Below are positions 761-24,600 of a DNA stretch of 64,000 nucleotides, in pieces (positions within the stretch are counted from its first letter, which is position 1; every line of letters begins with the position of its first letter). The position numbers were made by a program, and so were the translations under genes. The notes beneath the pieces are model-generated. The model was not told the DNA's origin, ran no database searches, and saw only the letters and a program-made list of their open reading frames with translations. Location of the stretch: assembly GCF_963921235.1 (NCBI RefSeq), contig NC_086112.1, forward strand, positions 15,066,001 to 15,130,000, given 5' to 3'. The DNA comes from Mobula hypostoma. Taxonomy: Eukaryota.

Positions 761-1285
761 GTCTTCGGCACATATATTTAGCTAGGCTGCCTAAGGATTC
801 TGCACAGTATTGTAGTAATTTTATGTATTGCACTGTATTGCTGCAAAAAAAACCTAATTTCATGATATGTGAGTGATGATAAACCTGATATGGGTCTCTA
901 TTGTTGTGGACTGAGAGTGGGCAGGGGTCAGGGACAGGGATATCACGGTTGGGAAAAGGGGAAGGGAGAGGGGAGGGAGTGGGAAGCACCAGAGAGACAT
1001 TTTGTAATGATCAATAAACCAATTGTTTGGAATCAAATGATCTTGCCTGATGTCTCAGGGCTGGATGTGTCTGCACCCATGTCACCCCCTCCCCTGACAT
1101 GCCTTCTCTACCACCTGTCCCACACCCCTCCCATGACGCTCCACCCTTGCATTTCCCAACATCCTTTGCTCCACCCAGATTTACAAACTCGTTCACCGCT
1201 CCACTTTGACAAATACAGTACTGTGCAAAAATTCTTCGACACCCTAGCTATACACATATGTGCCTAAGACTTTTGCACAGTACGG
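761..1285 (+). mobile_element. Composite Tc1-type non-autonomous element with mini-MITE ends, copy 1 (left end clipped by the CR1)
   Basis: Right end CAGTACTGTGCAAAA...TTTTGCACAGTAC; core shared with copies at 9725, 11192, 13785 and 18250. Confidence 0.8.
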
Positions 1286-1837
1286 ATTACAAAAATCCTC
1301 TATGATTAATAATGCTGCTCTTCTTCTCAATAAATGCCTTTATTCAGTGTGCCATGCATTAACTTCACTGACAGCAGTTGCCAAGGCTGCTTTTGCAGCA
1401 AGTTGCAAACCCAAGAATTCTACCCACAAGGACAGCAGGTGCATGTGAAAAGCATGCCTGCAAGTTCTCCACCAAGCAACACACAATTCTGAACCGGTAA
1501 CAGATTCAAAAACTCTCTATTGAAGAACGCTGTGGAAGAACTTGCATGATTTATATCACGGCAATTCAAGCAGGTGATTTGTAACTGTACCAGACTGATT
1601 GCGAGAATACAGCAAGTTTTCATGCAGCCAATCGATCGTGCGGTGAATTGACTGGGCCTCCTCTGCACAGAGGGCACTATCTTTTGGACGCAGTCTTTCG
1701 AGTTCACATGCTTTTTGTCTCAGTGGATCCGATGCGTCACTCCCACACCGTAAGATGCTCAGTGTGTACCATTACTGACATGGCTCGGTAAAATCATTTA
1801 ATTCTGCTACTCTGTTGTCCTCCTTGCTCTGTCATAT

Positions 1838-21600: not shown

Positions 21601-24600
21601 CAAAAGAGATACATGGAAATTAGTATTCAACCACTATTATTAATATTTTTTATTACAACTATTATCATTATTTAGTTTAATAGAGTGGAATTAGAATTGC
21701 ACATAAACATCTATTTGAGTGCCTAATTATTTTCTATATTATCTCAATTTGCACTTGTGAATGTACAAATTAGTATAGATTTACTCACATAAAAAATGGA
21801 GGTTATATATGTAAAAATAAGTTTGTGTATTGCTTGTGAATACCTTATCCAAATAAGAATGAAATTTAAAAAAAAAAGAAAAATAGAGGGGTATTGGTAA
21901 CTCTAGGTAGTTCTAAGGTAAGGACATGTTTGGCACAGCATGGTGCCGAAGGGCCTGTATTGTGCTGTAGGTTTTCTATGTTTCTAAAAGTCTTCACTGT
22001 GGAAGACACTAGCAGTGTGCCAGAGGTCCGTGAGTGTCAGGGAGCAAGGGTGAATGCTATTGCTATTATGAAGGAAAAAGTGCTAGAAAGGATGTGTTGT
22101 CTTTGGAGAGAACCCAGATGAGGTTCACAAGCAACACACATCAAAGTTGCTGGTGAACGCAGCAGGCCAGGCAGCATCTCTAGGAAGAGGTTCACAAGGT
22201 TGATTCCGGTAAAGAAGGGGTTAACATATGAGGAGCGTTTGGCAGCTTTGGGCCTATACTCACTGGAATTTAGAAGAATGTGGGGGGATTTCACTGAAGC
22301 CGACTGAGTGTTGAAAGGACTAGATAAGGTGGCTGTGGAGACGAACTCGAGGGCATTGCCTTAAAATTGAGGGGTGACCCTTTAGAACAGAGTTCAGGAG
22401 GAATTTTTTTTAGCCAGAGAGTAGTGAATCTGTCGAGTGTTCTGCAATCCTTCATCAGTGGAGACCAAGTCCGTGGGTAAATTTAAAGCAAACATTGATA
22501 GTTTCCTGATTGGTCAGGGCATCAAAGGTTATGGCAAGAAAGCAGCTGTATGGGGTTGAGTGGGATCTGGGATCATCCATGATGAAATGGCGGAGCAGAC
22601 TCAATGGGCTGAATGGCCATATTCTGCTGCTTTGTCTTATGGTTGGGGAAAGGGGAATGGAGAGGGGAGGGAGCAGGAAGCACCCAGAGAGACATTCTGT
22701 ACTGATCAATAAACCAATTGCTCGGAATCAAACAACCTTGCCTGGTGTCTCAGGGCTGGGTGTGTCTGCTACAGAGGCACAGTGGTTCCCCCGATGCAAT
22801 TCTGATTTGATGCTACTTGTGTGGAGCCCCCATTTTCTCCCTGTGGCCGTGTGGGTCCTTCAGTACAAATATGTACTGATGGATTTAATCGTGACTGTAA
22901 ATTAGTACCAGTATAGGTAGGTGTAAAAAAAATCAAAGGGAAACACACACAAAATGTTGAAGGGAATCAACAGGTCAGGAAGGATCTATGGAAAGGAATA
23001 AAGAGTCAACGTTTCAGGCTGAGACCCTTTATCACCTGTGTCTAGGCTTTAAAAAGCATCCTTCTGTAGACATTACCCCATGACTGCACACTGGAGGTTA
23101 ACACAGCCGAACCCAGGTTTTCCCTTCTCAAGATCTTACTCTGATCTTTCAGGACAGTGACCAACAGTGGCAACCGGACTGATTTTTGGAGTGGCCAAAG
23201 AGCAGTTCCATAGGAAAACAACAGGAATTCTGCAGATGCTGGAAATTCAAGCAACACACATCAAAGTTGCTGGTGAACGCAGCAGGCCAGGCAGCATCTG
23301 TAGGAAGAGGTGCAGTCGACGTTTCAGGCCAAGACCCTTTGTCAGGACTAACTGAAGGAAGAGTGAGTAAGGAATTTGAAAGTTGGAGGGGGAGGGGGAG
23401 ATCCAAAATGATAGGAGAAGACAGGAGGGGGAGGGATAGAGCCAAGAGCTGGACAGGTGATAGGCAAAAGGGGATACGAGAGGATCATGAGACAGGAGGT
23501 CTGGGAAGAAAGACGGGGGGGGGGGAACCCAGAGGATGGGCAACAGGTATATTCAGAGGGACAGAGGGAGAAAAAGGAGAGTGAGAGAAAGAATGTATGC
23601 ATAAAAATAAGTACCAGATGGGGTACGAGGGGGAGGTGGGGCCTTAGCGGAAGTTAGAGAAGTCGATGTTCATGCCATCAGGTTGGAGGCTACCCAGACG
23701 GAATATAAGGTGTTGTTCCTCCAACCTGAGTGTGGCTTCATCTTTACAGTAGAGGAGGCCGTGGATAGACATGTCAGAATGGGAATGGGATGTGGAATTA
23801 AAATGTGTGGCCACTGGGAGATCCTGCTTTCTCTGGCGGACAGAGTGTAGATGTTCAGCAAAGCGGTCTCCCAGTCTGGGTCGGGTCTCGCCAATATATA
23901 AAAGGCCACATCGGGAGCACCGGACGCAGTATATCACCCCAGCCGACTCACAGGTGAAGTGTTGCCTCACCTGGAAGGACTGTTTGGGGCCCTAAATGGT
24001 GGTAAGGGAGGAAGTGTAAGGGCATGTGTAGCACTTGTTCCGCTTACACGGATAAGTGCCAGGAGGGAGATCAGTGGGGAGGGATGGGGGGGACGAATGG
24101 ACAAGGGAGTTGCGTAGATCAGGAACTTTGACAGTGATGTTCATTATCATGATGAGACTTTGAAGAGGGTAGTCACCTCAACACAGAAGTGATTCCACAA
24201 CCTATGGACTCACTTTCAAGGACTCTACAACTCATATCTCAGTATTATTTACTCACTTATTTATTAATTTTTTTTGTATTTGCATGATTTGTCTTCTTTT
24301 GCACATAGGTTGCTTGTCAGTCTTTGCTTATGTCTGATTTTTTCATTGATTCTGTTGTATTATTTGCTACTGTGATTGCATGCAAAAATGAATCTCAGGG
24401 TGGTATACAGTGACACATATGTACTTTGATAATAAATTTATTCTGAAATTTGGAATGCTGAAGTTCCTCATTAAAACAACAAAATCAATAAAATTAAATG
24501 AGTTTTTACATCACTATTTCTATAATTTTCAGGAAAGGAAACTACAGCCATTTATCTATATGGGCAAACTTTTCAGATTAATTCTGGGAGGAGGAATTTA

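What the first reader, a model, noticed from the sequence alone, without database searches (positions are those of the whole stretch)
761..22770. Composite transposon built from two self-complementary Tc1 mini-MITEs that captured a ~410 bp cargo
Seen: five copies (761+, 9725-, 11192-, 13785+, 18250+ split) share one core. The core is a LINE-type 3' tail (...GATAAACCTGATTCTGAT) followed by purine-rich and pyrimidine-rich blocks. Each end is not a single TIR but a ~65 bp hairpin, CAGTACTGTGCAAAAGTCTTAGGCAC-spacer-GTGCCTAAGACTTTTGCACAGTACTG (consensus by eye). The spacers of the two ends are reverse complements (ATATATATAGCTAGG / CCTAGCTATATATAT). The same TIR bounds Tc1 transposase relics at 16916 and 34235, which identifies the likely mobiliser. 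Inference: a eukaryotic counterpart of an IS-flanked composite transposon, with four usable TIRs, that amplified captured host/LINE DNA.
Basis: partly seen in the sequence, partly recalled or inferred. Interest (0 to 1): 0.7.

Follow-up and report, generated by a model that had tools for sequence, protein, structure and literature searches.

The report
Ray Tc1 element with mini-transposon ends
A dead, roughly 540-base "jumping gene" found in thousands of copies in ray genomes has, at each end, a complete 67-base miniature Tc1 transposon, so it looks like the two-ended composite transposons of bacteria; this is a real but modest structural curiosity, and how it arose is not yet proven.

Summary
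Five old copies of one unit of about 540 bp lie between 755 and 22820. They are 79-84% alike in the cargo.

- **Ends.** Where they survive, each end is a 26-bp TIR, a 15-bp spacer and the inverted 26-bp TIR, with TA on both sides. The two ends mirror each other.
- **Boundaries.** The end/cargo junctions are the same in every copy and the flanks are unrelated. Repeat similarity stops at the outer TIR tips, so the unit moved whole.
- **Cargo.** It starts with about 85 bp of a LINE/SINE 3' tail that also occurs alone four times in the window.
- **Mobiliser.** The same 26-bp TIR, without the palindrome, bounds two Tc1 deletion derivatives with TA duplications. Their coding remnant matches Sleeping Beauty transposase.
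- **Age and abundance.** Contigs of two related species carry the same three insertions. Summed contig depth suggests thousands of copies.

Not shown:
- that the 67-bp ends ever moved alone (no solo copy in 64 kb);
- any other cargo;
- any empty site;
- clean TA on both sides of any one copy.

The "composite of two mini-MITEs" reading is therefore the best fit, not proven. First readers flagged the same architecture in six other pieces of this genome; none was followed up. I class it as a new variant of a known kind, of moderate interest.

The parts
755..1285 (+). Copy c1. It holds a left-palindrome remnant (759-809), the cargo, and a complete right palindrome (1216-1285). The first ~13 nt of the left outer arm are cut off by a LINE 3' end occupying 1-754.
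9725..10366 (-). Copy c2. The left palindrome is at 10366-10300, preceded by TA. The cargo carries a ~145-bp SINE-like insertion (about 10213-10064, TSD TGGGTC). There is no right palindrome: the cargo ends ...GACAAATA, then CTG, then unrelated DNA.
   Evidence: Contigs of organisms B and C show the same junction (records 17 and 25).
11192..11685 (-). Copy c3. Both palindromes are present but decayed (left 11685-11620, right 11258-11192). The cargo has a ~40-bp internal deletion. TA follows the right end.
   Evidence: The insertion is orthologous in organisms B and C (records 19, 20, 26, 27).
13785..14327 (+). Copy c4, the best preserved. Left palindrome 13785-13849, TA, LINE tail 13852-13939, remaining cargo to 14262, right palindrome 14263-14327. 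TA precedes the left end.
   Evidence: The junctions are covered in organisms B and C (records 22, 24, 29, 32).
18250..18411 (+). Copy c5, 5' part. It holds the end of the left inner arm, TA, the LINE tail and the start of the purine-rich block. It is interrupted at about 18411 by 4.2 kb of nested retroelement DNA.
22644..22820 (+). Copy c5, 3' part. It resumes in the purine-rich block straight after a LINE 3' end (...CTTATGG) and is lost in the middle of the cargo.
16916..17280 (+). A 365-bp Tc1 internal-deletion derivative. It has 26-bp TIRs like the palindrome arms, TA on both sides, and a remnant of the transposase C-terminus on the minus strand. After the TIR the sequence continues GTGTAAAAA, not the palindrome.
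34234..34634 (+). A 401-bp Tc1 internal-deletion derivative with the same TIRs and TA on both sides. Its minus strand encodes the last ~67 residues of a Tc1-type transposase, broken by one stop.
   Evidence: The peptide aligns to Sleeping Beauty SB100X residues 158-209 of chain 5cr4_A, E 4e-4.
31141..31225 (-). A stand-alone copy of the ~85-bp 3' tail that opens the cargo, here at the end of a tRNA-derived SINE (31141 to about 31500). Other stand-alone tails lie at 59636-59714 (3' of RT ORF 60277-60798), 41934-42012 and 38410-38456.

Best explanation
This is an old, abundant, non-autonomous Tc1-family DNA transposon of rays.

**Structure.** TA / 67-bp mini-Tc1 / TA / ~410-bp non-transposon cargo / TA / the same 67-bp mini-Tc1 inverted / TA.
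- Each mini-Tc1 is the 26-bp Tc1 TIR, 15 bp, and the inverted TIR. That is an extreme internal-deletion derivative, of the kind known as MiHsmar1/MADE1 in primates.
- The cargo is a piece of genomic DNA spanning the 3' junction of a LINE/SINE: the last ~85 bp of the tail plus ~320 bp beyond it.

**Inferred origin.** Two copies of the mini element inserted at TA sites about 410 bp apart, in opposite orientation.

**Inferred spread.** Tc1 transposase supplied in trans paired the two outermost TIRs and cut and pasted the whole unit. This form then amplified to thousands of copies before the species sampled here diverged. All copies are now dead.

**Shown.** The architecture, the shared junctions, the unrelated flanks, the TIR identity with Tc1 relics, and the age and abundance.

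**Inferred only.** The two-insertion origin, the use of the outer TIRs by a Tc1 transposase, and any activity of the inner TIRs.
For: - **TIR link.** The 26-mer matches 7 times against 0 expected. The arms equal the TIRs of two Tc1 relics, which have TA on both sides. The relics' coding remnant matches SB100X at E 4e-4, the only PDB hit. In the relics, similarity between the two ends stops after 26 bp, so the palindrome is not a feature of the parent element's terminus.
- **Complete mini elements.** The inner arms end at the exact TIR tip and are followed by TA on the cargo side in 5 of 5 left and 3 of 4 right junctions. This is what complete elements inserted at TA would give.
- **One unit.** Junctions are identical in all copies. 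The non-tail cargo occurs only inside the five units. All 7 palindromes lie inside units.
- **Transposition.** The 300-bp flanks are unrelated. TA abuts 3 of 6 outer ends, where about 0.5 would be expected by chance.
- **Cargo origin.** The tail occurs alone four times, once at the end of a tRNA-derived SINE and once 3' of an RT ORF. The two cargo halves are not an inverted duplication: score 15, against a shuffle mean of 15.7.
- **Age and abundance.** Contigs of organisms B (about 2% different) and C (about 5-10% different) cross the c2, c3 and c4 junctions. Summed contig depth over the cargo is 10^3-10^4 times single copy in four organisms.
- **Other sightings.** Six other first-reader notes describe the same architecture elsewhere in this genome. 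These are leads only.
Against: - No solo 67-bp unit occurs in 64 kb. This is a weak test: it only bounds density at roughly one per 20 kb.
- No pair of palindromes with a different cargo was seen.
- No copy has clean TA on both outer sides. c3-L has AG, c1-R has AT and c4-R is ambiguous.
- There are no empty orthologous sites.
- The mirror orientation of the two ends has only a 50% prior under two independent insertions, but is automatic under a symmetric one-step origin.
- The contig-depth figure is not a copy number, and the purine-rich block may attract low-complexity matches.
- No full-length Tc1 with this TIR was found. The window holds none, and the word search with the relic peptide was blank.
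Confidence: 0.62

Rival explanations
1. A one-step long-TIR MITE. On this reading the palindromic 67-bp ends were never independent elements. They arose together when a Tc1 copy was miniaturised during gap repair after excision, by template switching or fold-back synthesis, with filler DNA captured as the cargo. The family is then an ordinary Tc1-derived MITE whose TIRs (67 bp) are longer than those of the parent (26 bp).
For: - The two ends are exact mirror images, spacer included, which a symmetric process gives automatically.
- There are no solo palindromes in the window.
- Tc1/mariner MITEs with TIRs much longer than the parent's are well documented (Tc7, Cele families, Goblin). Template switching has been proposed for Goblin, and filler capture during abortive gap repair is also described (PMC3814204).
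- First-reader notes report fold-back Tc1 forms with 'two right ends' in this genome. These are unchecked.
Against: - The inner repeat is the complete 26-bp TIR, ending at its exact tip and followed by TA. This is expected for an inserted element but not for a repair product.
- Fold-back at each end independently would give loops taken from each end's own subterminal DNA. In the Tc1 relics those differ beyond 26 bp, whereas the two spacers here are the same sequence.
- The cargo shows no inverted duplication.
Confidence: 0.28
2. Not a Tc1-mobilised unit at all. On this reading the copies spread as part of a retroposon or larger repeat, or by local segmental duplication, and the Tc1-like palindromes are passengers.
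For: - The cargo begins with a LINE/SINE tail.
- Five copies sit within 22 kb, which could suggest local duplication.
- The TA duplications are imperfect.
Against: - The tail lies at the 5' side of the cargo, not at the 3' end of the unit.
- No copy is 5'-truncated in the retroposon manner. The truncations seen are due to later insertions.
- The flanks of the copies are unrelated.
- Similarity ends at the outer TIR tips at 3 left and 3 right ends.
- Copies differ from each other by about 16-21%, like dispersed family members.
Confidence: 0.05

Closest known systems
TIME-COMP elements of Pseudomonas (composite transposons bounded by two Tn3-derived MITEs; PMC4133298, PMC13367494)
   Same: Two copies of a non-autonomous miniature element, in the same or opposite orientation, bracket unrelated DNA. 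The whole moves with a transposase supplied in trans.
   Different: TIME-COMPs are bacterial, belong to the Tn3 family and make 5-bp duplications. They exist at one copy per genome, their transposition was shown experimentally, and solo TIMEs are present. The element here is eukaryotic, Tc1 family and TA-targeted, apparently amplified to thousands of copies. Its mobility and solo ends are only inferred.
MiHsmar1 / MADE1 (80-bp Hsmar1-derived MITE of primates; PMC2800235, PMC3814204)
   Same: The 67-bp end unit is the same kind of object: two transposase-binding TIRs joined by a few bases, derived from a Tc1/mariner element by near-total internal deletion.
   Different: MADE1 is known as thousands of solo copies. 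Here the mini unit has so far been seen only as the two ends of a larger unit.
Long-TIR Tc1/mariner MITEs such as Tc7 of C. elegans and Goblin of Aedes (PMC3814204)
   Same: These are non-autonomous elements that borrow a Tc1/mariner transposase. Their inverted repeats are much longer than the parent's, and only the outermost part matches the parent TIR.
   Different: In those elements the extra repeat length is subterminal or unrelated sequence. Here it is a second, inverted, complete copy of the TIR itself, ending at the TIR tip and followed by TA.
Eukaryotic two-element transposition: Ac/Ds macrotransposons in maize and FB-flanked TE/FB-NOF in Drosophila (from my own knowledge, not checked here)
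   Same: The ends of two nearby class II elements are used together to move the DNA between them.
   Different: Those are rare, large, individual events involving other superfamilies, not a small family fixed in thousands of copies.

Membership tests
Non-autonomous Tc1/mariner element (MITE-like) | Terminal inverted repeats matching those of a Tc1 transposase-bearing element in the same genome | tested here: met
   The arms match the TIRs of the relics at 16916-17280 and 34234-34634 at 23-25 of 26 positions. The relic peptide matches SB100X at E 4e-4.
Non-autonomous Tc1/mariner element (MITE-like) | TA target-site duplication at the outer ends | tested here: inconclusive
   TA abuts 3 of 6 surviving outer ends (c2-L, c4-L, c3-R). 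No copy is clean on both sides. Both Tc1 relics have TA on both sides. The copies are about 10% decayed.
Non-autonomous Tc1/mariner element (MITE-like) | Many dispersed copies with shared termini and unrelated flanks, and no transposase gene | tested here: met
   There are five copies with unrelated flanks and shared ends. Depth is 10^3-10^4 times single copy in four organisms. The only long ORF is compositional, shifts frame between copies and has no relatives.
Composite transposon (two mobile elements bracketing cargo) | Each end is a complete copy of a mobile element | tested here: met
   Each end is a 26-bp TIR, a 15-bp spacer and a 26-bp inverted TIR, with TA on both sides of each unit.
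Composite transposon (two mobile elements bracketing cargo) | The end element also exists and moves on its own | tested here: inconclusive
   No solo unit occurs in 64 kb, but this bounds density only weakly. The precise loss of the c2 right unit could be an excision footprint (TA-CTG-GA), a slippage deletion, or a truncated inner arm. A genome-wide census is not possible with these tools.
Composite transposon (two mobile elements bracketing cargo) | The whole unit transposes using the outer ends | tested here: met
   Similarity ends at the outer TIR tips at three left and three right ends, and the flanks are unrelated. The enzyme step itself is inferred.
Composite transposon (two mobile elements bracketing cargo) | The same end elements can bracket different cargoes | not testable with these tools
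   Only one cargo is seen in the window, and no genome-wide search of this eukaryote is available.
SINE/LINE retroposon | 3' tail at the 3' end of the unit, 5' truncation, variable-length target duplications | tested here: not met
   The tail lies at the 5' side of the cargo, inside the palindromes. The copies share both boundaries.
Foldback element | Long inverted arms making up most of the element | tested here: not met
   Only the 67-bp ends are inverted repeats. The left and right cargo halves score no better than shuffles.

The most novel reading that the evidence does not exclude
The doubled, palindromic ends may be functional rather than incidental. Two transposase-binding sites per end, reached by capturing whole mini-elements, would be a convergent route to the two-site ends of IR/DR Tc1 elements such as Sleeping Beauty. 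That could have made this unit a better substrate than ordinary deletion derivatives and explain why it out-amplified them. If so, pairs of mini-Tc1 units would be a general natural vehicle for moving arbitrary host DNA in vertebrates.
Probability: 0.1. Interest if true: 0.65.

Novelty: new variant of a known kind. Interest (0 to 1): 0.4.

Why it matters
Composite transposons are textbook in bacteria, including ones bounded by MITEs. In eukaryotes, moving DNA between two neighbouring class II elements is known mainly as rare individual events. A small Tc1-type unit with complete mini-elements at both ends, fixed in thousands of copies across ray species, would show two things:
- such a composite can become a successful family in a vertebrate;
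- host or retroposon DNA can be captured and multiplied in this way.

It also offers a natural substrate for asking how a Tc1 transposase chooses between inner and outer ends. The element is long dead and nothing suggests a host function, so the value is mechanistic and for repeat annotation in elasmobranch genomes. Repeat libraries may split it into pieces or mislabel it.

Tried and rejected
- **Cargo as an ancient inverted duplication, making the whole element a foldback.** Rejected. The local alignment of the left half against the reverse-complemented right half scores 15, against a shuffle mean of 15.7. The purine/pyrimidine pairing in the fold reflects composition.
- **Palindrome inherent to the parent Tc1 terminus.** Rejected. 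In both relics the ends match for only 26 bp.
- **Segmental duplication.** Rejected. The flanks are unrelated.
- **The c2 right end as a clean excision footprint.** Left open. TA-CTG-GA fits the canonical Tc1-type footprint with one change. The same product can arise by slippage between TAC repeats. The following GAAAAAGT could also be a remnant of the inner arm.
- **Coding potential of the ~130-codon ORF across the cargo in c1 and c4.** Rejected. The frame shifts between the copies after about 60 codons, the sequence is low-complexity, and there are no relatives.
- **Getting more copies from outside the window.** Two metagenome scans, one with the TIR and one with the cargo, found nothing. 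Protein word searches with the Tc1 peptide and with the cargo ORF were blank. One 20.8-kb Pristis pectinata locus, reached through an RT homologue, holds no copy.
- **Literature.**
  - The Hsmar1 reconstruction paper (Miskey 2007) is not held, so my recollection that it bears on this is not used.
  - The phrase search 'flanked by two MITEs' returned no paper.
  - The macrotransposon + MITE search returned one plant MITE paper that I did not open.
- **The large representative protein search.** Not run.
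Full report
**What is there**

BLAST of the first copy against the window, a MAFFT alignment (A1) and a profile search define five copies of one unit:

| Copy | Coordinates | Strand | State |
|---|---|---|---|
| c1 | 755-1285 | + | left end cut, right end complete |
| c2 | 10366-9725 | - | left end complete, right end absent |
| c3 | 11685-11192 | - | both ends present, decayed |
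| c4 | 13785-14327 | + | both ends complete |
| c5 | 18250-18411 and 22644-22820 | + | split and truncated |

Pairwise identity is 79-84% in the main cargo, 81-90% in the tail segment and lower in the ends. The window has no N.

**Anatomy**

c4 is the best-kept copy. It reads TA, then a 65-base palindrome (13785-13849), TA, 88 bases of retroposon tail ending GATAAACCTGATTCTGAT, and about 320 bases with a purine-rich and then a pyrimidine-rich block. It ends with CA (TA in the other copies), a second palindrome (14263-14327), and the flank.

- Each palindrome is the 26-base TIR, a 13-17-base spacer and the inverted TIR.
- The spacer of the right palindrome is the reverse complement of the left one, so the whole end is an inverted repeat of the other end (pairs I1 and I2).
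- Each end is also self-complementary (I3, I5).
- As single strands the best-kept palindromes fold with z-scores of -4.6 to -6.4; the c2 and c3 ones have decayed.

Of the ten possible ends, six are complete, two are partial and two are missing.
- c1-L lost its first ~13 bases to a LINE 3' end that fills 1-754.
- c5-L keeps only the inner arm.
- c5 is split by 4.2 kb of nested retroelement sequence and truncated inside the cargo.
- c2-R is missing exactly from the cargo edge.

**Did it move as a unit?**

The palindrome/cargo junctions fall in the same alignment columns in every copy. The 300-base flanks of the copies are unrelated. The one apparent match (c1 upstream against c5b upstream) is the LINE 3' end that inserted into both copies. 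Similarity stops at the outer TIR tips at three left ends (c2, c3, c4) and three right ends (c1, c3, c4).

- A profile of the palindrome finds seven instances, all inside the five units. Single TIRs occur only at the two Tc1 relics.
- A profile of the whole family finds the non-tail cargo only inside the five units.
- The unit was therefore copied as a whole to unrelated sites.
- TA abuts three of the six surviving outer ends. This is more than chance for a dinucleotide expected about 9% of the time, but no copy is clean on both sides.
- This weak target-duplication evidence is compatible with copies that have decayed by about 10%. It is not proof.

**The link to Tc1**

The elements at 16916-17280 and 34234-34634 carry the same 26-base TIR at both ends, with TA on both sides.

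- Their minus strands encode the last 50-67 residues of a transposase.
- The 57-residue piece from 34405-34575 aligns to residues 158-209 of Sleeping Beauty SB100X (chain 5cr4_A) at E 4e-4, the only PDB match. Pfam gives only a sub-threshold DDE_3 hit.
- In both relics the two ends resemble each other for 26 bases only, and the sequence after the TIR is not the palindrome.
- The palindrome is therefore not a feature of the parent's terminus. Its arms are exactly the parent's TIR.
- Nine of the 15 spacer bases match the subterminal bases of the 34234 relic, eight positions read from one end and seven from the other. This count is by eye and carries weak weight. It fits an extreme internal-deletion derivative, the class of the 80-base MiHsmar1/MADE1 (PMC2800235; PMC3814204).

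**The cargo**

Its first ~85 bases align with four stand-alone tails in the window, all ending AATAAACCTGATTCTGA. One is the 3' end of a tRNA-derived SINE (31141 to about 31500). One lies about 560 bases 3' of an RVT_1 reverse-transcriptase ORF on the same strand (60277-60798).

The cargo is therefore a genomic fragment spanning the 3' junction of a retroposon plus about 320 bases beyond it. The two halves of the cargo are not an inverted duplication. The roughly 130-codon ORFs in c1 and c4 share a frame only for about 60 codons, are low-complexity and have no relatives.

**Age and abundance**

Sequencing runs of the source species (A) and of relatives B, C and D hold the region or the family. 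Contigs laid on 9300-14900 show the following.
- B differs from the window by about 2% and C by about 5-10% in single-copy stretches.
- Contigs of B and C cross the c2 right junction (records 17, 25), the stretch from c2's left end to c3's right end (records 19, 26), c3's left end (records 20, 27) and both ends of c4 (records 22, 24, 29, 32).
- All three insertions, and the loss of the c2 right palindrome, therefore predate the split of these species. No empty site is available.
- Summed contig depth over the cargo bins is 5x10^4 to 3x10^5 against about 16 for single-copy bins in X1, with similar ratios in the other runs.
- The tool warns that this is not a copy number, and the purine-rich block may attract unrelated matches. 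Even so, the family is clearly present in thousands of copy-equivalents in four organisms.
- Contigs of D align from position 13836, inside the inner arm, into the cargo (records 10, 11), so paralogues there share the inner-arm/cargo junction.

**Interpretation**

The feature that best separates "two inserted mini-elements" from "a long TIR made in one repair event" is the inner arms. They are complete TIRs that end at the exact tip (CAG/CTG) and are followed by TA on the cargo side, in five of five left and three of four right junctions. An element that inserted at a TA leaves exactly this. A repair product has no reason to.

Independent fold-back at each end would also give different loops, because the parent's subterminal sequences differ. 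Here both spacers are the same sequence. I therefore favour the composite origin at 0.62.

The one-step alternative keeps 0.28 for three reasons:
- the mirror symmetry is automatic under it;
- no solo unit is seen in 64 kb;
- long-TIR Tc1/mariner MITEs and template switching are documented (PMC3814204).

Unchecked first-reader notes also mention fold-back Tc1 forms in this genome. A retroposon or duplication origin is essentially excluded in the window.

By orientation only three end pairs are productive (left mini, right mini, whole unit), so "four usable TIRs" overstates the case. The c2 right end (…GACAAATA CTG GAAAAAGT…) could be a Tc1-type excision footprint with one later change, a slippage deletion across the palindrome, or a truncated inner arm. 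I leave it open.

**Comparison and novelty**

The closest functional analogue is the bacterial TIME-COMP: two Tn3-derived MITEs bracketing unrelated DNA and transposing as one, shown experimentally (PMC4133298).
- The end unit is of the MiHsmar1/MADE1 kind.
- Tc7 and Goblin are Tc1/mariner MITEs with over-long inverted repeats, but those repeats are not second copies of the TIR.
- Maize macrotransposons and Drosophila FB-flanked elements use the ends of two elements together, but as rare large events. This point is from my own knowledge.
- My literature searches did not turn up a description of an amplified eukaryotic family of this design. The library is partial, and I could not consult Dfam or Repbase.
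- I class it as a new variant of a known kind.

**Earlier notes of this scan**

Six other first-reader notes describe the same architecture on other pieces of this genome. None had been followed up. They suggest the family is widespread but are not independent evidence.

**Limits**

No tool here searches this eukaryote's genome, so solo units, other cargoes and the autonomous parent could not be counted. External scans and protein routes were blank.

Noticed in passing
window 10064-10213 (-), inside copy c2: A ~145-bp SINE-like element (…CTGCAGATGCTGGAAATC…GGAGGAACTCAGCAGGCCAGGCAGCATC…) is inserted in the cargo with a 6-bp duplication, TGGGTC. Its bin has by far the highest summed contig depth of the laid stretch: about 4.5 million, against about 16 for single copy in X1. 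It is an extremely abundant repeat in all four organisms.
   Followed up: partly
window 1-754 and 22190-22643: The same LINE 3' end (…ATGATGAAATGGC…CTTATGG) has inserted into two of the five copies: into the outer arm of c1 and into the purine-rich block of c5. Further copies lie at 13045-13320 and 6064-6341 on the minus strand.
   Followed up: partly
window 755-22820: Five copies sit within 22 kb and none in the other 42 kb. This is much denser than even the highest depth-based abundance would predict. Local hopping of Tc1-type elements is one possibility; it was not tested.
   Followed up: no
window 18412-22643 versus 48127-48632 and 50644-52084: The 4.2-kb insert that splits c5 is 67-68% similar to the DNA on both sides of the ERV-like relic noted at 48632-50635 by another first-reader note. 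The same LTR-type retroelement family therefore probably occurs twice in the window. Its 247-codon ORF (20807-21550) has no Pfam match.
   Followed up: partly
window 16890-17320: The Tc1 relic at 16916-17280 sits inside the tail of another SINE family (…GGTGACATATA | relic | TATGTACTTCGATAATAAATTTACTTTGAAC…). The TA-rich target prevents reading the duplication unambiguously.
   Followed up: no
window 869-1267 (+) and 13837-14226 (+): ORFs of 132 and 129 codons run across the cargo in c1 and c4. They share a frame for only about 60 codons. The likely cause is the G-rich then C-rich composition, which is poor in stop codons. No relatives were found.
   Followed up: yes
window 31141-31500 (-) and 59636-60798 (-): A tRNA-derived SINE and a LINE with an RVT_1 ORF share the same ~85-bp 3' tail, which makes them a likely SINE/LINE partner pair. 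The RT's best named relative is from the sawfish Pristis pectinata, at 72% identity.
   Followed up: partly
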